A stretch of DNA of 64,000 bases, taken from the NCBI RefSeq assembly GCF_035594765.1, contig NC_085843.1, forward strand, positions 220,759,971 through 220,823,970. The letters run 5' to 3'. Numbering within the stretch: the first letter of the stretch is position 1; each line of letters starts with the position of its first letter. The DNA is from Anolis carolinensis (lineage: Eukaryota). Position numbers and translations under genes: made by a program. Shown here in pieces: positions 12,490 through 64,000 of this stretch. Under the pieces are notes generated by a model that searched no databases, was not told the DNA's origin, and saw nothing but the letters and a program-made list of their open reading frames with translations.

Positions 12490-12880
12490 TAGTTATACAG
12501 TGGCAGATAGGAAGGCCCTCCAAAGGGTCATCACTTCTGCACAGCAAATCATTGGTTGCTCTCTCCCCTCTTTGGAAGAACTTTACTATTCCCGCTGCCT
12601 TAAGAAAGCTCAGAGCAAGAATGCTCGGCATATTCTTTTTGAATTATTGCCATCTGGAAGACGGTACAGGGTCACAAAGACAAGGACAAACAGACTGAAG
12701 GATAGTTTTTATCCCATTGTTGTGGCTATGTTGAACTCCATGGTTTCCCACTGATGTGGCATTGGGGGCTGCGTGGTGGGGATGTAGAGGGATGGGTGTG
12801 TTGTTTTGTGATGTGTACGGAGGAAGACATGTCACTTCATTGTGCTATAGCTCAATTACAAATAAAGCGATTCTATTCTA
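12490..12880 (+). mobile_element. Rex1/Babar LINE 3' fragment
   Basis: ADRKALQRVITSAQQIIGCSLPSLEELY...LLPSGRRYR...RLKDSFYP, typical of the Rex1 C-terminus, followed by 3' UTR and AATAAA. Confidence 0.8.
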
Positions 12881-15030: not shown

Positions 15031-15769
15031 TAATAATAATATTATTAACATTGTTAATTAATAAAACATAATTATTAATTATTATTAAATATTAATAATA
15101 ACACCGGAGCTTCAAGAGTCAGCACAGAATCCAATGGCTACGCTGATGCTTTTATGTCAGTGGTTCTCAACCTGGGGTCCCCTGATGTGTTTGGCCTACA
15201 ACTCCCAGCCAGTTTACCAACTGTTAGGATTTCTGGGAGTTGAAAGCCCAAAACATTTGGGGACCCCAGTTTAAGAACCACTGTTTAAGCCGCTTTGAGT
15301 CCCCTTCGGGGGAGATAAAACGGGGTATATATAAATATAAATAATTTGGGGTGCAGGAATGTAGCCAGCCAAAGCCAGGACAAAGAGGGGGGTTCTTTGC
15401 CGGTCTGGGTGGGCACAGAAAGCTCGCCGGCCAATCAAGGCGCCTTTGCCAAGCTCCACAGGGAACAGGCAGCGAATCAACCCAAAACAGCGCGACAGCC
15501 AGTCGGCCCAAACCCTGCCAAAGGGGGCAAGGGAAGGCTATGGGCCAAAAGGGGATCCCTTCGCATCCTCTGGTGCAGGCATGGGCAAACTTCGGCCCTC
15601 CGGGTGTTTGGGACTTCAACTCCCACCAGTCCTAACAGGTTCAAACCCTTTCCTTTTCCTCCCCAGCCGCCTAAGCGGAAAGGAAGGAAGGGGCCTGGGG
15701 CTGTTAGGAATGGTGGGAGCTGAAGTCCAAAACACCTGGAGAGAGGGCCCAAGTGTGCCCATGCCTGCC

Positions 15770-16360
15770 CCAAAGGCCACAGGAGCGGAGGCGGGCGGGC
15801 AAGGCAACCCTTTGACCGAGGCTGGGCTGCCTTCCAACCAGGGCGCCCTTCTGAAGGCCCGGCCAACCCTCCCGCCCGTGTTCACCTCCGGCAACGAAGG
15901 AGCGGAGCCAGTAGAAGTCCCTCCGTGCGGGCGACGAGGAGGGCAGACGGGCGCTGGGCCTCGGCGCCGTCGCCTCGCCGGCCATGGCGCCCTCTCTCCG
16001 AGGGAAACGGGCAGCGGGGCGACAGGGCTGGACTATGCCCACATGGCGCCGGGCATAGCCCTTCCTCCTTCCTTCCAGTGCCTCCCCTTAAGAGGCGGGG
16101 CGGGGAAAGCGAAGGCAGGCGGCGAGGCCTAATGCGCAGGGCGGAGCCTCGGTCCCTCACAAAGGGGCTCAGTTTGGCCATGGGACTTCATCTCCCAGAA
16201 TGCCTGGCCATTGGGCATCTGGCGAGGGCTTCTGGGAATCGGAGGCCCAAACCCCTGAGGGCTGTGCTGCGGGGAGGTGGGGCCTGCCTGCGCCTTGTGC
16301 CATCTCCTCACAGCGGTCAAGCTTATTCCTCCTCAGACCGGAGTCCCTCCGCCAATCCAC
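15770..16360 (-). promoter_or_regulatory. SLC25A16: CpG-rich promoter / first-exon region of SLC25A16
   Basis: High GC and CpG density around exon 1. GC boxes (gaggcggggcgggg ~16092-16105), an SBS/ZNF143-like motif at 16183-16204 and a CCAAT at ~16352. Confidence 0.8.
15886..15985 (-). CDS. SLC25A16: SLC25A16 (Graves disease carrier / mitochondrial CoA carrier) coding exon 1
   Basis: ATG at 15985 in a strong Kozak context (GGCGCCATGG). Encodes MAGEATAPRPSARLPSSSPARRDFYWLRSFVAG, matching the RRDFYWLRSFxAG hallmark. Phase-1 donor G|GTGAAC at 15885. Confidence 0.93.
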
Positions 16361-16657
16361 CCAAGAGAAATTAGCTAGGCCTGATGAGGAGTTTGGCCTC
16401 TTCCACACCGCTGAATAAAATCCCACATTTTCTGCTTTGAACTGGAATACATGCCAGTGTGGACTCAGATAACCCAGTTCAAAGCAGATATGGTGGGATT
16501 TTCTGCCTTCATATTCTGGGTTATATGGCTGTGTGGAAGGGCCCTGAATCTCACAGGGCTGCCGCTCTAGCAGGCAGCCTCACACTGCTGCTTTGAGCCT
16601 CCAGCTCCCGGAATTCCTGGCTATTGAACACTTTGGCGAGGGTTTTTGGGAGTCGGT

Positions 16658-18880: not shown

Positions 18881-18939
18881 CTCCAACTCCACAAATTCCT
18901 GGGCATTGGACAGGCTGGCTAGAATAGCCTTCCCCCGCA

Positions 18940-19440
18940 CACACCACAAAACAACACACTCATCTCTCCACACCACTGCCACATCAGTGCAAAACCACAG
19001 GGTTCACCATAGCTACAACTCTAGGATAAAAGCTATACTTCAGTCTGTTTGTCCTTGTCTTTGTCACCCTGTATTGTCTGCCAGATAGCAATAATTCAAA
19101 AAAGAATACACCAGATGAGATGGATCCCCAAGAATGCTCTGAGTTTTCTTAAGGCTGCGGGACTTATAAAGTTCTTCCAAAGAAGGGAGAGGGCAACCAA
19201 TTATTCTCTGTGCAGTAGCTGTAACCCTTTGGAGCGCCTTCCTATCTGCCACTGTGTAGCTACCAAATTTGCATAGATTCGGTATGTTAGGACATTATAG
19301 CATAGCAGTAGAAAGACAAGCAATTTTTCATTCAGTTGGTGGTTCCTTAGGAGTCTCGGATAGTAGAGTCTCTGCTGGAATCTCTTAGCCAACGCTGCTG
19401 TATGAATGCCCCATGTCAGATACTCCTTCGCAGCAGAGGG
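18940..19440 (-). mobile_element. Rex1/Babar LINE 3' fragment
   Basis: QQRLYY.RLLR...ADRKALQRVTATAQRIIGCPLPSLEELY; homologous to the 12490 copy. Confidence 0.8.
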
Positions 19441-50134: not shown

Positions 50135-52069
50135 ATGGCTCGCGATGCCAGATCTTCAAGATTAGTAAAGAAACAGGAGATAAGCAAAAAGAAACCAAGC
50201 CTAGCCCAAAGTAAATCTTGCCAAGTAACAAAAGATGCCAAAAAAAATTCCCCAGTGGCAAACTGTTCTGCAAACTGCAAAAGGTTACTGGCGGAAAAGA
50301 ACGAGGGCAAGAAAAAGCCACAAGAACACAAACCTCCTATGGATTCACCGTGCCGATTTCTCCGCAGCAGTGTCACCAAAGCCTTTGCTGGATCATCTTG
50401 GAAGAATCTGAAATTAAGTGATAGCGTTCTCTTTCATAACCAGCCTCCGTTGAGCCTTACCATGAATCTTCGCAGGAAGCCATTTCCCCATAGACTGTTT
50501 GAAACAGCGGCAATCATGAGAGCGAAGAGACGAACTGGCCTGGTAAAAAGTTCAGGGAAAAGAGAAAAGTCTGAGTTAGGAACATCCCATAAAATAGAAA
50601 GGAAAGGAGTGGAAAAAAGAGCTCAGGGTTTCAAACAAGATTGCAACCAAAATGTTGAATCGCTGTCTACCAAAGCAGGCAGTGCCTTATGTGATATGGA
50701 ACCAGACCATCCCTCTGAATGTGACGGTGAAGCCAAGAAGAAAGCGCCAACTCCTGAAAACTGTCTTTCTGTTTCTAGTGTGGATGAACCGAGTGTCTCT
50801 ACTCCAAAGGCACTGCAGGAGGATGGCAAATGTAAAGAAACTGTGCCTACTGAGCAGGCCCTGGAAGATTTATCTACTGATGTCTCATATGTAGCTTTGG
50901 CTGAGCCTGTTTCTTCTCATCTACACCTTGACTCTGCCAATGCTTTAAAGGTATGTGAAAGAGAGTTAGGAACACTCGTGAAACCAGGCCTAGAGAATAA
51001 TTTTAATTCCGCACCACCCTCCAAAGAACATTCCCCTCCATCGTTTGACTCCACATTGCAACTTTCTTCTGAAACAAACACAAAGGTGCCTGAGAAAAGG
51101 CCAGAGTCTCCTATAGAAGGTCACTCCATTGCTACCTGTGGTTCGGTGCTAACTCCTTGTGAACCCGATGCTATCATTTTGATTACCTCAGAATTAATCT
51201 CAAAATTGCATTTAGACGACACGTGTGCATTATCAGAGCCCCACCATGAGCAAGATCATGAGCCTGCCAGTAGAAGAGAACCTGATTTGCTGTGTATCTC
51301 TGAACAGGGAGATTCTCCAAAAGATCCAGGCCTTGGTGGGAAATCCTCTTTGCCAAATGACTCAGAATTCAAACTAGGTGACAAAGCACTTGACTTGTCA
51401 ACTTCCCAAAAGGATTATTCAGGTTGTGATCACATTAAGAAAGCATCCACTTGTAAACCAGTTTCTAATCCCGTTTTTACTTATGGTATCTTGGAAGACC
51501 TTGAGCAGACCCTTGAGAGGATAGCTGCTGAAACATTGAATTTAGATTCAACTACTGTGCCTGATCTATCACTTCAGCCAGGAAAAAGGACGACTGATTC
51601 CGTTTCAGTGAGTAGCAATATCTTTAACAACACTTCCCAAAAATCCTCAAAAGATGCTAACTTGAAGTTGCCATCAGAGTCTGTAGGGAGTCCAGAAACT
51701 AGGCTTGTGGCAGACGGATCCTGTCCAAACCTTCAGTGTCCCTCCCTAGGACTGGGAAGTGCTGAAAAAGACATGATCTCTGTTCAGGGCACCACAAAAT
51801 GCGGCACGAATCCCAGTACAACTTCTGAACTAACCTCCTGGGGAAATCCAACTAGTGCCTTTCCTGTCCTGTTTCCCTCTATGCAACCTGTAGAAAAGAA
51901 AAAGCGAAGGCGATGTGGAGTATGTGAGCCATGTCTGCGGAAAACTAACTGTGAAGAATGCAGCTGCTGCATGAAGCGCAAAACAAGCCACCGGATCTGT
52001 AAAAAGAGAAAATGTGAAGAACTGAAGAAGCCTCCCCCACCCCTGCCACCATTAATGTTACCCTTAAAG
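50135..52069 (+). CDS. TET1: TET1 first coding exon (exon starts 50015 after tttcag|; 645 codons; CXXC zinc finger at its 3' end)
   Basis: N-terminus [13 protein letters not shown] resembles mammalian TET1. C-terminal [45 protein letters not shown] is a TET1-type CXXC. Phase-0 donor AAG|GTAAG at 52070. Head-to-head arrangement with SLC25A16 as in mammals. Confidence 0.95.
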
Positions 52070-54437: not shown

Positions 54438-57183
54438 CAGGTCTTCCTCACTCTCCACTGGCTTTTTGGTTTATATTAGTTATTTAGTCTGAACAATAAG
54501 GTGTAGCTATTTGATCACTTGAATATTGTACAGTTCTGTAGACCACAGTTCAAATCCTTGCTTATCCATGGAGACCCACTGGGTTATCTTGAGTAAGTCA
54601 CACACTCTCAGCTTCAGAGGAAGGCAGAGTCAACCCCTTTTTGAACAAGTCCTGGCAAGAAAACCCCATAATGGGTTTGCCCACCTTAGAGTCAACGTAA
54701 GTACGTATTGAAGGCATACAGCAGCAGCAATAATAGAGTAGTGCTTGAGACAATGAAGTTGCCTCTGTCATCCAACCGTAAAGATTTTTGGAGCTAAAGG
54801 GGGAAAGGTGCTCAGAATCACTATACTGGCTTCATAGGTTTCCTCTTCCAGGCATTACTGCTTTTGGCAGAGCTTTGAACATCATTGAAAATTATTGTTC
54901 CTGCTACTGCTGGAATTGCTGAGTCTAAAGTAATTTATTTCCTCTAAGTATCTCTTTGAATTACTTGCTTTCTGTTACTTAAAAAAAACACCTTAGAACC
55001 CATGAGAGAAAAACAGAAATAGGAATTTCCTTTTTACTTTTTTTCTATTTGTGGTTTGCTTTAACTTCATGTATATAAATTTTTAATAAAAAAACTTTAA
55101 GAAGAGAAAGGTAGAAAATGCAAATTATGTTAAAATGTATCTATAATACTCTTTAAGAGTAATTGGCACTTGTTAGATTGGGACTTCGTTGCTCTTGTTA
55201 TTCCTGCCCCTTGATCCCCAAAATGCTTGTTAAAGAAAGCTACATTATTGTAGTTTGCTATTTCCAAATTCTGGAAATAACAAATGAAGGCTGGAGTGGA
55301 AGCCCTCCCAGGAAAAGGCTGTATCCTTCCAGGCTGCTGAGTCCATTTGGAGAAGAGGAAATCACCTAGAAATTAATCAATAGGGAAATGTTAAACAGCA
55401 AAGTAGTACCATTAATCCACAGATCAAAACTCGATTAATGATGGAATACATAAATTAGCCCATTCATCCTAGCATCCTTCTACTTACAATATAATGTATA
55501 ACTGTTTATTTTTTAAAAAAATATTTAGTGAACAGATATCTGCAAGAAAAGAATGGCAGGAGTTGAGTGAGGAAGCAATTAATGCAAGGAGTATAAAAAA
55601 AAGGTTTCAGCAGCGGCCAGTTCAAGAAAAGGATAAATGCTAGCTTTTCTGTCAATCTTTTTTTCAATCTAAACATGCTCTCCTTGATATCTCCTGACCT
55701 TCCCATTGTATTGTGGCTTTGCTTCTTCACCCTTTTCTTTAAGCCGCCTTTCTGCCTTTTTAATGAGCTACCCCCTATTCTTTAACATCTTTTTGGCTGT
55801 CAGTTTCATTTTCCCGGGCCCTTATATACGGGAGAAATGGTGTGTATTTTGTACCTTGAATATAATGCTCTTGAATTTATGAATCTGCCCCTGTCTCTTC
55901 CCATTTATATTGATGGCAAACACTTTTTCGTCTTAAGAAATGCAGACAGTTGTGTCAGCAGAGTTACTGCTGCAGCTTGGTGCAAACAGATGGAGGGATT
56001 TCTTGTACTTTAGAGTAAAATATTTCCTCAGTTAAATATTGTTCAAAGATGCGTTCCTGCTTCTATATGGAAAAAGGGAGAAACTGAAGATCCGATTTGC
56101 AATACAAATATCTAGCCAACGTCTTTTGCATCCCAGGAGAGACAAGCAGGAGAATTTGGCTGATACTTTTACTCTCAACCTGAACTGTGTGCCAAAATCT
56201 CAAGACTTCTCATTTGTACCTAATTTTATTTGTTCACATCAGCATACAGGTACTGAATTGACTGTTTGGTTATATATGTAATTTCAGAACTTGTCATATT
56301 TTTGTAGTGCATTTTATGTTCCCAAGATGTATTTTATTGAGATTGCATATACAGGGGGGAATCTGGAGCCTTTCGTTGAGCAGCTGTGATATATCAGATT
56401 TAATAGATCAATCTCATTCGTGTTTTCTCAGAAATAAGTACCATTGTTTATACTGTGAGCTTTCTTTTGATAAATGTGCATAGGACTGTATCCCAAGGCT
56501 GCAACTATGTGCATGCTTTCTTGATAAATTTCACTTGAGGAAAGTATGCCAAAAATATGGGTAAATATGCAAACAGTTGACTTCTACCATTTTTTCAGAT
56601 TTTGCCACAAAGCCCTGGCTCTGAATAGAAAAGGATTTTAAATGCCCACATAATCCACCACAATTTATGATTGTATGTGTCTACATACATACAATAAAAT
56701 GTACTGGAACAATTGTGATGTGTATTTCACATATATGTGAAAATGCTTCATACTTTGGGAAAGCATCATGCACAAAGTGGCTTTTTAAAAAATCAGTTCA
56801 AGTAACTCCACATGTGACAACTCCAAGATCACACTGAGCACATTGTCTGAATTTAAGTCACTTGCTAATTCTCTTCCCACAGAAGCAAGAGAAGTATGGG
56901 ATGTGTACAAAAGGCCGTACACGCCTGTTATTGTTGTGTGCCTTCAAGTCATTTCCGACTTATAGCAACCCCAAGGCAATCCTATAATGGAGGGGTTTTT
57001 TGCAAGATGTTTTCAGAGGGGGTTATATAGAAATATAGAACTGTGTAGTTGGAAAGATCCCCAGGAGTCATTTGATCCAAACTGCAGGACTCCATATCTA
57101 AAACATCACCAATAGATGCACTTTAGCACTTACTTAAATGGAGAGTCCTTCACAGTCTGATGTAGGCTGTTCCAGAGCTGTAG

Positions 57184-57222
<39 letters not shown>

Positions 57223-59029
57223 TAAGGGTTCAATCTCCCTACACAAAATCTGTCAGGTAAAAAACCCAGTTTACTCATGAATTTAACTGGTTAACCATTT
57301 CATGAATAAACCAGATTTTTTTTAACCTGATACATTTTGGGGGGGGGGGGGGTGTTGAACCTGGCTACGGCCCTAGTCTGTTCCATTGTATCTTACCACA
57401 GCTCTGATTTTTTCCCCCTAATGTTTAATGAGAATAAATTAGAAATTGCAACCAGTGCTATGCTTGTATGAGAAGAATAGCTTTTCCTTGTGTTTGGGAA
57501 TTATGATTTACCTTGTTGTGAGTAGAACATAGCTCTGTATAAATGGACAGGAAAGATTCTGTAAACTGGAAAAGGAGCTTCTTGCATAGGAGCTTGCCTT
57601 GATAAGCGTGGGAAAAGTAGTTGGCAGTAAAAGTGTAGATTTCTTTGGAAGGCTAGATTAGCAAAAACAAACTTGGGGAATTTTGTCTAGTGTCTATTGT
57701 GATGCAGTAGTCTTTATCTGAAATAAATAAAGAATTTATTCTATAAATAAGAATCTTAGAGAAATTTATCTGTTAATGTCAGTGGGGTTGAAGTTCAAGA
57801 CAAGGTCTAAGATTTCCAGTGAAAAAAATCAAAAGTAAATAAATAAGTGAGATGAATACATATTTATCCTAATCCAAATAATATGTATGGCTCAAAGGTC
57901 TGAATCAATAAAGCATTGGGGATTTCAGCATAAAGCAGAAATTATGGTAATATTTTTGCACGGTGCTTCTAACTGTTTAGCATGCTTCACATGAACAGTA
58001 TTGTCTAGCTGTAATCCATACATCTCTACATGCTGTAAATCATTCTTCTAAAACCAAGTAATATCCTGATGTATTGAATTACAGTTCCCATCATAGTCTT
58101 CTGGAGGACGATGGGACTTGTAGTACAGCACTTATTGAGAGCAGGTTGCCTAGTTCGTCACATATGTGAGGCCTACCAGAGATTTAAGTTTTTCTTGATT
58201 CAGAATGAACAAATTAATATTTCTAAACCACCATACCAGCAAGGGTTTTGTTGCTGATTTTTATCTTCCCTGACTTTGTTGCTGTGTACCTTTCCGACTT
58301 ATGTTGACTCTAAGGTCATGTAATAGATAATGTCTAAATCCCCCTCTCCCTGCCATAGAAATGAAAAATATCATAGTAAACTGGAGTATGAGTGCTCTAG
58401 AACAGGGCTTCTTAAACTTTATCCACTCATGACCCCTGGTGTGAGAGAATTGGCCATCTGCAAGGATGTTGCCCACAGGATGCCCGGATGTTTGATGTTT
58501 TACCATCCTTGTAGGAGGCTTCTCTCATGCTCCTGCATAGTGAGCTAGAGTTGGCAGATGGGAACTCACCCCGATTCCTAAATTCGTACTGCCGACCTTT
58601 CGGTCTGCAGTCCTGCCGGCACAAGGGTTTAACCCACTGCGCCACTAGGGGCTCCAGCAATTGACATGGGAAGGAGGGACAGCTTGAACACAATATATAT
58701 ATATATATGAACAGTCACATTTCACAGGCACACAAAAGCTGCAGGTCCCACACCACGCTGGGAATGAAATCATAGAGTTGGAGGAGACCTTGTGGATTAT
58801 CCAGTCCAAACTCATTCTGCCAAGAAGTAGGAAAATTATATTAAAAGCACCCCTGATAGATGGCCATTCAGCCTCTGTTTAAAAGCCTCCAAAGAAGCCT
58901 CCACCACACGCTGGGACAGAGAGCTCCACTGCTCTTTGTCTCTTTCCTCAGGAGGAACTGTCACTTCGAAGCAAACTGTGCTTTGGCAGCAGCTTTGGAT
59001 TGCAGCCTTCATAAATGACATGTCAACCA

Positions 59030-60360
59030 CCTTACAGTGCATTATAGGAGTCTACACTTGACCATGAGAGTATACACTGACCATATAATGCAGTCTAGGA
59101 GTCTACACTCACCATACACTTGACCTTACAGTGCATTATAGGAGTCTACACTTGACCATGAGAGTATACATTGACCATATAATGCATTATAGGAGCTTAC
59201 ACTTGACCTTACAATGCATTATGAGAGTATATACTGACCATATAATGCATTCTAGGAGTCTACACTCACCATACACTTGACCTTACAGTGTATTATAAAA
59301 GTCTACACTTGACCATAAGAGTATACACTGAACATATAATGCATTATAGGAATGTACACACACCATACAATGCATTCTAGGAGTCTACACTTGACTTTAC
59401 AATGCGTTCTAGGAGTCTACACTTGACCTTACAATGCATTATGAGGGTATACACCAGGCATGATCAAACCTGGGCTCTTCAGGTGTTTTGAGCTTTAACT
59501 CCCACAATTCCTAACAGCTGGGAGTTGAAGTCCAAAACACCTGGAGGGCCCAAGTATACCCATGCCTGGTATACACTGACCATATATTGCGTTCTAGGAG
59601 TACACTGACCATACAATGCATTCTAGGAGTTATTGATCATATAATGCATTCTAGGAATACACTTGCCATAAAATGCATTCTAGGAGTCTGCACTGACCAT
59701 ACAATGCATTCTAGGAGTCTACACACACCATACACTTGACCTTACAATGCATTATGAGGATATACACTGACCATATAATGCATTCTAGGCAGTACTGACC
59801 ATATATTGCATTCTAAGAGTACACTCACCATAAAATGCATTCTAGGAGTCTGCGCTGACCATACAATGCATTCTAGGAGTCTACACTTAACATACACTTG
59901 ACCTTCCAATGCATTATGAGGGTATACACTGACTGTATAATGCATTCTAGGAGTTATTGAACATATAATGCATTCTAGGCAGTACTGACCATATATTGCA
60001 TTCTAAGAGTACACTCACCATAAAATACATTCTAGGAGTCTGCGCTGACCATACAATGCATTCTAGGAGTCTGCACTCACATACACTTGACCTTGCAATG
60101 CATTCTGAGGGTATACACTGACCATATAATGCATTCTATGAGTTACTGATTATATAATGCATTCTAGGAGTGCACTTGCCATAAAATGCATTCTAGGAGT
60201 CTGCGCTGACCATACAATGCATTCTAGGAGTCTACACTCACCATATACTTGACCTTGCAATGCATTATGAGGGTATACACTGACTATATAATGCATTCTA
60301 GGAGTTATTGAACATATATTGCGTTCCAGGCGTTACTGACCATATGATGCATTGAAACTG
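59030..60360. repeat. Satellite/minisatellite, ~27-30 bp monomers with 162/189-bp higher-order period
   Basis: Core actgaccata(t/c)aatgcattctaggag. Marker variant aatgcatt(a/c)tgagg at 59746, 59908, 60097 and 60259. Confidence 0.93.
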
Positions 60361-60379
60361 CATTAGAGAGCAGTGTAGA

Positions 60380-61250
60380 GTGTGTCCTCCCCCCTCCCCC
60401 CTCCCCGAAACATTCCAAACAACTGCCACTTGTGGCGCGCGGGGAGAGCCAGTTCCTCCCTCGTATCTCGCTGTCAAGCGGTCTCGAGCCCCCTCCCTCT
60501 TCCTCCTCCCCCTCCCCCTCCTGCTTTCCCTTATCGCTCGCTCTGAATGGGCTCCGTCACGCGCGCGACGTGAGGCGTGGGCTGCTGCTCTTCCCCCTCC
60601 CCGCGCAGACAGTGTCCCCACGTAACCCTCGTCTCAGAGAGAGAGAAGGAGAAAGCACCCTACTAACGCGCTGCCTCTTCCCTTATAGAGTCAAAAGGCA
60701 CTTCCGTGTGTGTGTGTGTGTGTGGAGACAGACTGGCCCCCTCGAAGGCTGGAGGAGGAGGCGGAGGCCGAGCCCACAGAGGCTCCCCTTTGTTTGGGGG
60801 AAAAGGGCTGGGCGGACTTCGTGGAGGGGAGGGGAGGGGGAGGGGCGCGTGAGGCGAGGGAGTGGAATCCCGGCGCTCCCATTGGCTGGGCCCTTCCTGG
60901 AGGCCTTTCCGTGCCTGAGGCGCCTGTGGGGAAGGAAGGAGGGGGGGGAAAGAGGGAGGGAAGGAAGGAGTGGGGAGGCATGCCCGGCACGTCCCCAGCG
61001 CTGGCAGCAGGCGAAGCGGCTCGCCCTTGCGCCTCCTTGTAACACAACAAGCGACACCATGGCCGCAGACCCCCGAACGCGGCGCCCCTGTGGAGGCTCC
61101 TTCTGCAGGAGGAGGCAAGATGGCTACCTTCTTGTGGCTCTGCCCGCCCAGGATGGAGCCCGGCCTCGCTAGGCGTCCTCTCCGCGCGGGGCGGGCGGGC
61201 AGCAGGACCGCTGGTGGGTGCCCTTCTCCCCCCTCTCCTTCTTCCCCACC
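60380..61250 (+). promoter_or_regulatory. TET1: Intragenic CpG island; candidate alternative (short-isoform) TET1 promoter
   Basis: Dense CpG with GC boxes, reverse CCAAT at 60881, ETS-like CACTTCCG at ~60699 and YY1-like CAAGATGGC at 61116-61124. Lies directly upstream of the 54-bp exon. Confidence 0.75.
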
Positions 61251-61391
61251 TTTTTGAAGTTCTGCCCTCTTTTCCTCAACAACAACAACAACAATAATAA
61301 TAATATCCAAACTGTATTATGAGAACTGTCAATATTTTGTTGGTGCCTCAAAAGACTCACCCTCTGCCCTGTCTTTGGTGTCTCCTTCTAG

Positions 61392-61445
61392 GTGCTCACT
61401 GACAACAAAAGGCCTCAGAAGAGGAAGGAGGAAAGAGTTTTGAAG
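61392..61445 (+). CDS. TET1: TET1 second coding exon (54 bp, 'exon 3')
   Basis: Polypyrimidine tract plus tag|, and donor AAG|GTAATC. Encodes VLTDNKRPQKRKEERVLK, matching the 18-aa mammalian exon VIKENKRPQREKKPKVLK (recalled). Phase 0/0 fits the preceding exon. Confidence 0.93.
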
Positions 61446-62172
61446 GTAATCTTTCCATTGGTTGCGGACCAGTTATGTCAGGCATGGGCAAACTTCGGTT
61501 CTCCGGGTGTTTTGGACTTCAACTCTCACAATTCCTAACAGCCTACCGGCTGTTAGGAATTGTGGGAGTTGAAGTCCAAAATACCTAGAGGTCTGAAGTT
61601 TGCCCATGCCTGAGTTGCACAGATCTGGTTGTCTCTGTCCTGGGATAGAAAGTGCAATGCTCTTTTGACCCCCCCCCCCCCCAAATGATGCTGGAGTGGT
61701 AATGTTATTGTGGAGATTGGCATCCCTTTTCCATGTGGTTAAAACCTAACGTCTCCTCATAAGCTGGCTGACATGTCATTTATGAAGGCTGCAGTCCGAA
61801 GCTGCTGCCGATGCAAAGCACAGTTTGCTTTGAAGTCACATTTGCGCCTGAGAAAATATTTGCCCTGGAAGGAAAAGAGAGCTGTTCAGCAGTGGAGCTC
61901 TCTCTCTGCCCCAAAGTGTGGTGGAGGCTCCTTCTTTGGAGGCTTTTAAACAGAGGCTGGATGGCCATCTGTCAGGGGTGCTTTGAATGCGATTTTCCTG
62001 CTTCTTGGCAGAATGGGGTTGGACTGGATGATCCACAAGGTCTCCTCCAACTCTATGATTCTATGATTTCATTGCCAGTGTGATGCGGGACCTGAAACTT
62101 TTGTGTGCCTGTGAAATGTGACTTCGTATATATTTTGTGTTCAAGCTGTCCCTCCTTCCCATGTCAATTGCT

Positions 62173-62390
62173 GGATCCCCTGGTGGCGCAGTGGATTAAA
62201 CGCTTGTGCCTCCAGGACTGCTGACCGAAAAGTCAGCAGTTCGAATTCAGGTAGCGGGGTGAGCTCCCATCTGTCAGCTGTAGCTCCCATGCAGGGACAT
62301 GAGAGAAGCCTCCTACAAGTATGGTAGAACATCAAACATCCAGGCATCCTCTGGGCAATGTCCTTGCAGATGGCCAATTCTCTCACACCA
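62173..62390 (+). mobile_element. Second Sauria-head SINE family (Squam2/ACASINE2-like), 3'-truncated; mirror copy at 58437-58655 (-)
   Basis: Sauria-like tRNA head with a different body (GAGAGAAGCCTCC...GATGGCCAATTCTCTCACACC). Confidence 0.75.
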
Positions 62391-64000
62391 ATGGCACATT
62401 TCAGAAGAATGAGGCTTGAAATGGCGTAGTTGTTTTGAAACAATATTTTTCCTTTCTTAATATATTCTTGTTCAACTATGTGTAGATGTGTGCGCGCGCA
62501 TATATACATATATATGTCTGTAAACACACTGGAATGTCAGGAGTCGTTTGAGAAGCTGGTTTCTTTGCGGTGGCCAAAGTGTCCAGCAGCAGACAGCCCT
62601 CATGCGCCCCCATCCAGTTTTTTTTTGTGCATGTGGCCCTTTATAAATGACAGCCCTGTTCTCTTTCTTCCCTGAGTCGGGGAATTCCTGGGCACGTGCA
62701 GAGGAGGAAATCCCTGTTTACAAAGGGGAATCCCCATTCCATAGCAGGGAACCCAGGCCCCTCCCACAGGAGCCTTGCGCCATGTGTCATTGGAGCTTCC
62801 CAGAACTCTGAGTCTGCGCTGTTTGCTACCAAGGTTCCTGGTGGATACTGGGCACTCCTTGGCATATTTGCATTGGAGTGCTTGCCGTGGCATAATATGT
62901 AGCATGATGAAGCCCTGGCGCTACTTGGTAACTGAGTTGGAGCACTACGTTTTACGTCCTTGGAAACTCTTGTGGGTGTCATTGTTATGTGGCGAGGCTT
63001 ACTTGGCATGAGCTGTGGAATAGTGAGTGTTGTTATGCTAGTCATCCTGTTTGTACCTCCTCACTTAATAAAGGAATGTATCGTTAGGCAGAACACCACA
63101 GAAGATAAGTATTTATAAACAAAATGAATGAGTTCTTTAAAAGTTACGGATAGGTGTTCAGAAAATTAAATATTCTTTAAGACTTTAAACATGGTGGGAA
63201 TTAAGCTGCCAACTTTAATAAACCATAATAGAACTTATGAGTAGAAACTCATAGGATTGCTATTGAATGTTTTACTACTGATTTTACATTGAGTATTGTG
63301 ATGTGTGCTGAGGTCTGTGCTATGTTTTTCCATGGAACCACACTTGGTTTTTTATACATGCAATACTCAACCACATTGCTTTCCAATTGTGAGCATTTTA
63401 AGTTCTTGCTGTTGAATTTTGGATACCTGGTTGATTTTATATTGCTTGAAATAATGTAAATTCTGTGGAGCTGGATTTTTTGAGACTAGATGTTTACTTG
63501 GAAACATTCCAGCAAAACTATTTACAACAATATTGTTTAATGCGTTAACACTTAAGGATACTCGTGTTGCCGTCTTGCAAGAAACAATAACATTGGCCAG
63601 CATACATTTTGGTGCCTCAAATGTTAGCCCTGTTTCTAGGTATATTTGATGGCACCAATTTCCCCTTAGCAGCTCTAGTTTTTGAGATACAGAACATATG
63701 CCATCTACCAGTCGTCATCTGCTCACCCACAGGAAATCATGATAATCAAATCTAAGAAACTAGAGCTGATGTCGTCTATCCAATGCAATTTTCTGAATCA
63801 GCTGCCCAAATAACCCCAGGAACAGGCCTAAAAACTAAGACATGAATAAAGAAAACAATTTTTAGTTGGGCTGTGTAATTAAATGAAGGGTGTCATAGAC
63901 CAATATACAACTGAAATACCATTGGTTGCTATCTATTGGGATATTGTCTTGCACATTTCTCATTCAGCTATACTGTGCTCTTGTGCTGCTTTTGCTCATT

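What the first reader, a model, noticed from the sequence alone, without database searches (positions are those of the whole stretch)
58437..62390. ~600-bp composite inverted duplication brackets the TET1 54-bp exon and its CpG island
Seen: 58437-59034 is the reverse complement of 61760-62390. The match runs through the SINE and CR1 pieces and also through the unique linkers (ttgacatgggaaggagggacagcttgaacaca / tgtgttcaagctgtccctccttcccatgtcaa; gcagccttcataaatgacatgtca / tgacatgtcatttatgaaggctgc). So it is one segmental inverted duplication, not two chance TE insertions. The 2.7-kb loop holds the satellite, the CpG island and the symmetric (phase 0/0) exon. Established: long intronic inverted repeats promote exon skipping, back-splicing and ADAR editing. 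Inference: only the full-length TET1 pre-mRNA contains both arms, while a transcript from the internal promoter has one. This could be an isoform-specific RNA switch controlling a basic, NLS-like 18-aa exon next to the CXXC domain. The arms could also mediate DNA inversion of the internal promoter.
Basis: partly seen in the sequence, partly recalled or inferred. Interest (0 to 1): 0.8.

Follow-up and report, generated by a model that had tools for sequence, protein, structure and literature searches.

The report
Old inverted duplication around TET1 exon 3
A roughly 600-base stretch of repeat-rich intron DNA was copied in reverse long ago, so the two copies now flank a small TET1 exon and a CpG island in a lizard-like genome; the pair is real and could form double-stranded RNA, but it looks like a decaying neutral mutation scar, not a demonstrated switch.

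Summary
Window 58437-59034 is the reverse complement of 61760-62390 in one collinear alignment: 590 aligned bases, 88.8% identical, K2P 0.12, seven indels of 1-22 nt.

The match runs through a SINE fragment, a linker, a CR1-like fragment and unique DNA. Both arms share derived changes, the same SINE truncation point, and no TSD, TIR or poly-A. This supports one local inverted duplication and not two TE insertions.

Contigs of other public runs cross both inner arm junctions and all but cross the outer ones. An assembly artefact is therefore unlikely.

The 2.7-kb loop holds a local minisatellite, two hAT-like hairpin MITEs, a CpG island and a 54-nt phase 0/0 exon that follows the CXXC exon of a TET1-like gene.

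As RNA, the arms pair strongly (539 of 598 left-arm bases in the fold of the whole stretch). The geometry matches known loop-out exon skipping, circular-RNA and ADAR substrates.

I found no evidence of function. The arms decay like neutral DNA and substitutions show no bias that keeps pairing. The longest perfect identity is 41 nt. Only contigs were available, so skipping, back-splicing and editing could not be tested.

Inverted TE pairs are common in this window. The scan has also noted other intronic inverted duplications in this genome, on other DNA.

Verdict: a real but ordinary feature; the RNA switch remains speculative.

The parts
58437..59034 (.). Left arm of the inverted duplication, in TET1 intron 2. 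Rough layout: SINE fragment antisense to the gene 58437-58656, linker 58657-58692, (AT)n 58693-58708, unique 58709-58767, CR1-like fragment 58768 to about 58930, unique 58931-59034.
   Evidence: X3 contigs cover 58653-58852 (depth 13, no differences) and 58880-59076, which crosses the inner junction.
61760..62390 (.). Right arm, the reverse complement of the left arm. It lies in intron 3 and starts 314 nt after the exon-3 donor.
   Evidence: X20 contig 61618-61928 crosses the inner junction. X3 contig 62363-63200 reaches 28 nt into the arm.
59029..60353 (.). Minisatellite with units of about 29-31 nt and higher-order periods of 94-351 nt. It abuts the inner end of the left arm. Depth is only about 2-4 times the single-copy level, so it is local.
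59447..59576 (.). Palindromic hAT-like MITE inserted in the minisatellite, with the 8-bp target duplication GTATACAC. The family is high-copy.
   Evidence: Hairpin -77.6 kcal/mol, z = -11.9.
60380..61230 (+). CpG island 160-1000 nt upstream of exon 3, a candidate internal promoter. Human TET1ALT exons 1a and 1b lie within about 0.2-0.6 kb upstream of exon 3.
   Evidence: Run X19 covers only 60097-61265 of this stretch; unique coverage in X20 starts at 60560. PMC5737541.
61392..61445 (+). 54-nt exon of 18 codons (VLTDNKRPQKRKEERVLK), phase 0/0.
   Evidence: An X20 contig leaves the genome at 61445/6, meaning it is spliced at the donor.
61474..61613 (.). Second palindromic MITE of the same family, starting 28 nt after the exon-3 donor. 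It forms a near-perfect 66-bp hairpin.
   Evidence: -116.2 kcal/mol, z = -19.
50135..52069 (+). Large upstream coding exon of the TET1-like gene. It ends with the CXXC zinc finger and has the donor AAG|GTAAGA.
   Evidence: PF02008; TET1 CXXC 6asd, 1.3e-16; UniRef snake 'Methylcytosine dioxygenase TET', 47% identity over 99%.

Best explanation
An old local inverted duplication. About 600-640 bp of TE-rich TET1 intron DNA (truncated SINE + linker + CR1-like fragment + unique DNA) was copied once, in reverse, about 2.7-3.3 kb away. The likely cause (inferred) is a replication or repair error such as template switching. The two copies have since decayed to 89% identity. They now sit in intron 2 and intron 3 and flank a minisatellite, a CpG island and the 54-nt exon 3. 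As a by-product, any pre-mRNA started at the upstream promoter can fold into an imperfect stem of about 540 bp that loops out exon 3. A transcript started in the CpG island carries only the right arm. Such a stem is the known kind of substrate for ADAR editing and can favour loop-out skipping or back-splicing. I judge any such effect here to be incidental and unselected. Shown: the duplication, its single origin, its presence in independent runs, and its pairing potential. Inferred: the mechanism of origin, the age (tens of millions of years at 1-2e-9 substitutions per site per year, from my own knowledge) and neutrality.
For: A single collinear HSP with no other copy of the linkers or SINE body in 64 kb. 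Both arms share derived states against three other CR1-like copies. Both arms end at the same SINE position, and there is no TSD, TIR or poly-A. Independent-run contigs cross both inner junctions and reach 28-29 nt over the outer ones; the contig with the left-arm linker has single-copy depth of 13 against a baseline of 11-15. K2P is 0.122 with ts:tv 39:27 and seven indels. Of the transitions, 21 keep G.U and 18 break pairing, p = 0.75. The duplex energy is -987 kcal/mol against about -270 for shuffles, and 539 of 598 left-arm bases pair with the right arm in the 3954-nt MFE. Thirty inverted TE pairs of at least 70 nt lie within 8 kb of each other in this window, so intronic inverted repeats are routine here. 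Other intronic inverted duplications have been noted in this genome (unchecked notes).
Against: The arms do not decay evenly. Where polarity can be called, the left arm carries 23 derived changes and the right arm 6 (p = 0.002). This is concentrated in the CR1-like piece (13:1, seven of them C>T on one strand). A plain neutral clock does not predict this; it could mean constraint on the right arm or a mutation burst on the copy. Both arms end at the same SINE position, yet neither flank continues the SINE, which is slightly odd for a simple copy of neighbouring DNA. Genome-wide copies of the composite that are more than 5% diverged could not be excluded. No raw RNA reads were available, so a splicing or editing effect has not been excluded.
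Confidence: 0.75

Rival explanations
1. Isoform-specific RNA switch. In full-length TET1 pre-mRNA the two arms pair, loop out exon 3, and regulate its skipping, circularisation or ADAR editing. The transcript from the CpG-island promoter carries one arm and escapes this.
For: The geometry and thermodynamics fit. Exon 3 is short (54 nt), symmetric, and has a donor without G at +5 (GTAATC). Inverted Alu pairs within 5 kb are enriched around short, skippable exons in human (PMC13019027). Unique coverage in X20 begins in the CpG island. The right arm is less decayed than the left.
Against: No skipping, back-splice or editing data exist here. Substitutions between the arms show no bias that keeps pairing (21 vs 18). 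There are seven indels of up to 22 nt. A 54-nt single-exon circle would be unusually small (own knowledge). Many other inverted repeats exist in the same introns. The one RNA-like contig that holds exon 3 is spliced at its donor, so the exon is included in at least one transcript.
Confidence: 0.1
2. Two separate insertions of a low-copy composite mobile unit (for example a transduced or captured SINE + CR1 block), landing on either side of an open-chromatin CpG island.
For: Both arms end at exactly the same SINE position, with unrelated flanks on both sides. The uneven decay (23:6) could reflect different insertion ages from a slowly changing master copy.
Against: No TSD, TIR or poly-A at either copy. 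No third copy of the linkers or SINE body in 64 kb. The left-arm linker contig is at single-copy depth. Two hits of a rare element within 3.3 kb would be very unlikely.
Confidence: 0.07
3. A DNA inversion switch. Recombination between the arms flips the 2.7-kb loop, and with it the internal promoter and exon 3.
For: Inverted arms of about 600 bp flank the promoter-like island.
Against: The arms are 11% diverged and the longest perfect match is 41 nt, which is poor substrate for homologous recombination. Contigs of X3 and X20 show the reference orientation at both inner junctions, and no strand-changing joint is among those listed. Inversion would also flip exon 3 and break full-length TET1.
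Confidence: 0.02
4. An assembly artefact, meaning a false inverted duplication.
For: Inverted duplications next to satellites are a known assembly error type (own knowledge).
Against: The arms differ at 66 sites and 7 indels. Eighteen runs from several studies hold more than half of the words of this stretch. Short-read contigs reproduce arm-specific sequence and both inner junctions.
Confidence: 0.02

Closest known systems
Inverted intronic repeat pairs (IRAlus, reverse-complementary matches) that drive loop-out exon skipping, circular-RNA formation and ADAR editing
   Same: Two reverse-complementary arms lie in the introns on either side of a short exon and within 5 kb of each other. They are predicted to form a long, stable RNA stem (PMC13019027, PMC8330042).
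   Different: The arms are not two independent SINE insertions but one duplicated composite block about twice as long as an Alu. The loop also holds a CpG-island candidate promoter. No effect on RNA is shown here.
Small inverted duplications made by replication template switching or fold-back repair (short-range template switches, FoSTeS/MMBIR-type events)
   Same: It is a local, inverted copy of nearby non-coding DNA with sharp ends and no transposition hallmarks. Similar intronic cases have been noted in the same genome.
   Different: The event is too old to read microhomology at the junctions. One junction is now covered by a minisatellite. The mechanism is inferred, not shown.
Internal promoter of the CXXC-less short TET1 isoform in mammals (Tet1s / TET1ALT)
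   Same: There is a promoter-like region in intron 2 just upstream of exon 3. In human, exons 1a and 1b lie within about 0.2-0.6 kb of exon 3 and splice into it (PMC5737541). Here, run X19 covers only the island and unique coverage in X20 starts in it.
   Different: The human region is reported as not a CpG island and not conserved in chicken or zebrafish (PMC5737541). Here it is a clear CpG island. No transcription start site or first exon was mapped here.

Membership tests
Segmental (non-transposon) inverted duplication | Collinear homology across unlike segments, including non-repeat linkers | tested here: met
   One HSP runs through SINE, linker, microsatellite, unique DNA, CR1-like fragment and unique DNA.
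Segmental (non-transposon) inverted duplication | The copies share derived mutations and truncations that other family members lack | tested here: met
   Shared states against three CR1-like copies. Same SINE end point.
Segmental (non-transposon) inverted duplication | Linker parts are not repeated elsewhere in the genome | tested here: inconclusive
   No copy in the 64-kb window. The left-arm linker contig has depth 13, the single-copy level. Copies more than 5% diverged elsewhere could not be searched.
Segmental (non-transposon) inverted duplication | Present in independent samples, so not an assembly error | tested here: met
   inner junctions crossed by 42-169 nt, outer ones by 28-29 nt.
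Composite mobile element | Target-site duplications, terminal inverted repeats or a poly-A tail at each copy | tested here: not met
   the longest shared flank word is 5 nt and the longest terminal inverted match is 6 nt.
Exon-flanking inverted repeat that alters splicing (loop-out skipping, circular RNA) | Arms in opposite orientation in the upstream and downstream introns, within a few kb | tested here: met
   The left arm ends 2357 nt before the acceptor. The right arm starts 314 nt after the donor.
Exon-flanking inverted repeat that alters splicing (loop-out skipping, circular RNA) | A stable inter-arm RNA duplex predicted in the context of the whole stretch | tested here: met
   539 of 598 bases paired between the arms; -987 kcal/mol against about -270 for shuffles.
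Exon-flanking inverted repeat that alters splicing (loop-out skipping, circular RNA) | Skipped or back-spliced junctions seen in RNA | not testable with these tools
   Only Logan contigs were on offer and there were no raw RNA reads. One contig shows exon 3 spliced at its donor.
ADAR-edited long dsRNA | Clusters of A-to-G differences in the arms in RNA but not in DNA | not testable with these tools
   Contigs over the arms are swamped by genome-wide SINE and CR1 copies. No differences are listed in the arms.
Invertible DNA switch | Both orientations of the loop present in DNA | tested here: inconclusive
   Only the reference orientation is seen at the inner junctions in X3 and X20. Contigs drop rare variants.
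TET1 gene | A long N-terminal exon ending in a TET1-type CXXC finger, followed by a short basic exon | tested here: met
   PF02008. PDB TET1 CXXC 1.3e-16, although CXXC5 scores about the same. Snake 'Methylcytosine dioxygenase TET' at 47% identity over the whole exon. The catalytic exons lie outside the window.

The most novel reading that the evidence does not exclude
The duplicated arms form a dsRNA clamp only in promoter-1 (full-length, CXXC-containing) TET1 pre-mRNA. The clamp tunes inclusion of the basic 18-aa exon or marks that isoform by ADAR editing. This would couple promoter choice to splicing in a squamate lineage. The slower decay of the right arm would then reflect constraint.
Probability: 0.07. 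Interest if true: 0.6.

Novelty: new member of a known kind. Interest (0 to 1): 0.25.

Why it matters
If the arms did control exon 3, this would be a non-primate example of promoter-coupled loop-out splicing in a key DNA-demethylation enzyme, built from a duplication and not from two SINE insertions. As it stands, the value is modest. It is a clean, dated example of a local inverted duplication in a lizard-like genome. It is a ready-made natural dsRNA substrate for anyone studying ADAR or circular-RNA rules in reptiles. It also shows that the two copies of a duplication can decay at very different rates.

Tried and rejected
**Comparison with orthologous loci of other squamates**
- The word-based protein search with the CXXC exon gave only seven relatives (45-50% identity), on 2-3 kb contigs or from UniRef. 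These are too short to reach the arms.
- Full-length TET1 proteins fall outside that tool's length window.

**Other searches**
- Rfam on 56000-64000 found nothing.
- I searched the window for the 3' continuation of the SINE that I recalled from memory. There were no matches, so the natural SINE end could not be checked.

**Read data**
- Skipping, back-splicing, editing and inversion could not be assessed from the reads. All runs were contigs, and the repeat parts of the arms were swamped by depths up to 1e6.
- The listed joint 58639-to-62368 has only 21-nt sides inside SINE sequence. I take it to come from other SINE copies.

**Ideas considered and dropped**
- An SVA-like composite retroposon (antisense SINE + VNTR) was considered because the minisatellite abuts the left arm. 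I rejected it because the right arm has no VNTR and the minisatellite is local.
Full report
**Observation**

The inverted match is real and far beyond chance.
- The repeat finder lists collinear inverted blocks that tile 58437-59034 against 62390-61760.
- BLAST joins them into one HSP of 660 bits.
- A MAFFT alignment with flanks shows that homology starts and stops sharply at both ends.
- Over 590 aligned positions the arms are 88.8% identical, with 39 transitions, 27 transversions, K2P 0.122 and seven indels of 1-22 nt.

**Anatomy**

On the + strand the left arm reads as follows:
- a SINE fragment antisense to the gene (58437-58656);
- a linker, a short (AT)n run and about 60 nt of unique DNA;
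- a CR1-like fragment (58768 to about 58930);
- about 100 nt of unique DNA.

Only the tRNA-like SINE head and the CR1-like fragment have other, more distant copies in the 64-kb window (72-87% identity). The SINE body and the linkers occur only in the two arms.

The loop (59035-61759) contains:
- a 1.3-kb minisatellite that abuts the left arm;
- a palindromic MITE inserted in the minisatellite with the 8-bp target duplication GTATACAC;
- a CpG island at 60380-61230 (GC 0.67, o/e 0.62);
- the 54-nt exon 61392-61445, with good splice signals;
- a second MITE of the same family, starting 28 nt after the exon's donor, which folds into a near-perfect 66-bp hairpin.

**The gene**

The ORF 50135-52069 ends in a CXXC finger.
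- Pfam gives PF02008.
- The PDB search matches the TET1 CXXC at 1.3e-16, with CXXC5 and CXXC4 scoring alike.
- The ORF is 45-50% identical over its whole length to relatives, among them a snake protein that UniRef names 'Methylcytosine dioxygenase TET'.
- The exon ends in phase 0 at a GTAAGA donor, and the 54-nt exon is 18 codons, so the exon is phase 0/0 as claimed.

**One duplication or two insertions?**

Four results favour a single local duplication:
- The match is collinear through five unlike segments.
- Both arms share derived states against three other CR1-like copies in the window, such as GGAGGAGACCTTGTGGAT against the family's GGAAGAGACCTCATGGGC, plus a shared 3-nt insertion.
- Both arms end outward at the same SINE position.
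- Neither copy has a target-site duplication, terminal inverted repeat or poly-A tail.

In the DNA run X3, the contig that holds the left-arm linker (58653-58852) has depth 13, the single-copy level. The SINE and CR1-like parts reach depths of 1e4 to 1e6. More diverged copies elsewhere in the genome could not be searched.

**Artefact?**

An artefact is unlikely.
- Eighteen runs hold more than half of the sampled words of this stretch.
- Contigs cross the inner junction of the left arm (X3, 58880-59076) and of the right arm (X20, 61618-61928).
- Contigs reach 29 nt and 28 nt over the two outer junctions before breaking in SINE sequence.
- X3 may be the assembly's own sample, but X20 is from another study.

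**Does it look selected?**

Mostly not.
- Among transitions, 21 would keep a G.U pair in the sense RNA and 18 would break pairing (p = 0.75).
- The ts:tv ratio is ordinary, and indels of up to 22 nt interrupt the stem.
- Inverted TE pairs are routine here: 30 pairs of at least 70 nt lie within 8 kb of each other in this window.
- The scan's notes describe other intronic inverted duplications in this genome, one of them judged a neutral scar. These are unchecked leads.

One result is unexpected: the arms decay unevenly.
- In the CR1-like piece the left arm carries 13 derived changes and the right arm 1.
- Seven of those 13 are C>T on one strand.
- With the SINE head (10 vs 5) the total is 23 vs 6 (p = 0.002).
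- The right arm keeps the shared derived states, so it was not overwritten by another TE copy.
- I cannot explain this. A mutation cluster on the copy, a mutagenic setting next to the minisatellite, or constraint on the right arm are all open.

**RNA potential**

- The arms give a duplex of -987 kcal/mol, against about -270 for shuffled partners.
- In the MFE fold of the whole 3954-nt stretch, 539 of 598 left-arm bases pair with the right arm.
- The geometry matches inverted Alu pairs that are enriched within 5 kb around short skippable exons in human (PMC13019027).
- By geometry, only a transcript that starts upstream of 58437 holds both arms.

**RNA and promoter data**

Only contigs were available, so the evidence is thin.
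- The small run X19 covers only the CpG island (60097-61265).
- X20 has unique pieces only from 60560 onward: 60560-60762, 61360-61446, 61618-61928, 62393-62615 and 62787-63027. It has none in 57600-58347, which fits transcription starting in the island.
- One X20 contig leaves the genome exactly at the exon-3 donor, so it is spliced there. Upstream it leaves the genome at 61360, where there is no AG. I could not resolve this.
- In human, TET1ALT first exons lie within about 0.2-0.6 kb upstream of exon 3 and splice into it (PMC5737541). The position of the lizard island is therefore analogous.
- Skipping, back-splicing and editing could not be assessed.

**DNA inversion**

With 11% divergence and at most 41 nt of perfect identity, recombination between the arms should be rare. 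Only the reference orientation was seen at the inner junctions. Inversion would also disrupt full-length TET1.

**Verdict**

The best reading is an old, decaying mutation scar. At 1-2e-9 substitutions per site per year (my own rough figure), K = 0.12 implies tens of millions of years. The scar happens to create a long potential dsRNA stem around exon 3 and the candidate internal promoter. The regulatory-switch idea is a legitimate hypothesis of a known kind, but nothing here supports it beyond geometry and thermodynamics. Interest is low to moderate.

Noticed in passing
window 61474-61613 and 59447-59576: Two copies of a high-copy palindromic hAT-like MITE with CAGGCATG... ends. One lies in the minisatellite with the 8-bp TSD GTATACAC. 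The other starts 28 nt after the exon-3 donor and folds into a 66-bp hairpin (-116 kcal/mol, z = -19). The two copies also flank the CpG island and exon 3 and could pair with each other.
   Followed up: partly
window 58790-58870 (left arm, CR1-like piece): A strand-coordinated cluster of seven C>T changes specific to the left arm, with no G>A among them (the piece's single G>A lies at its 5' edge, beside the 8-nt deletion, where the alignment is doubtful). Overall the left arm carries 23 derived changes against 6 in the right arm, and most of the deletions.
   Followed up: partly
window 60097-61265 and 60560-63027: Run X19 (27 Mb of contigs) covers only the CpG island of this stretch. Unique coverage in X20 begins inside the island and continues downstream through intron 3. 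This fits an active internal promoter.
   Followed up: partly
window 61360-61446: An RNA-like contig (X20, 358 nt) matches only 61360-61446. It is spliced at the exon-3 donor, but it diverges upstream at 61360, 32 nt before the annotated acceptor, where there is no AG.
   Followed up: no
window 12490-12826 and 18929-19262: A second inverted pair (77% identity over 351 columns, which looks like the 3' end of a LINE ORF) brackets the other CpG island of the window at about 15600-16400, possibly the upstream TET1 promoter.
   Followed up: partly
window 59029-60353: The minisatellite is essentially locus-specific (depth about 2-4 times single copy in X3). It starts exactly at the inner breakpoint of the left arm, sharing the last 6 nt (ACCTTA) with it.
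   Followed up: no
window 60380-60530 and 60810-60980: C-rich (CCCCTCCCC) tracts on one side of the CpG island and G-rich (GGGGAGGGG) tracts on the other are partly complementary (I12). They could form G-quadruplex or i-motif structures.
   Followed up: no
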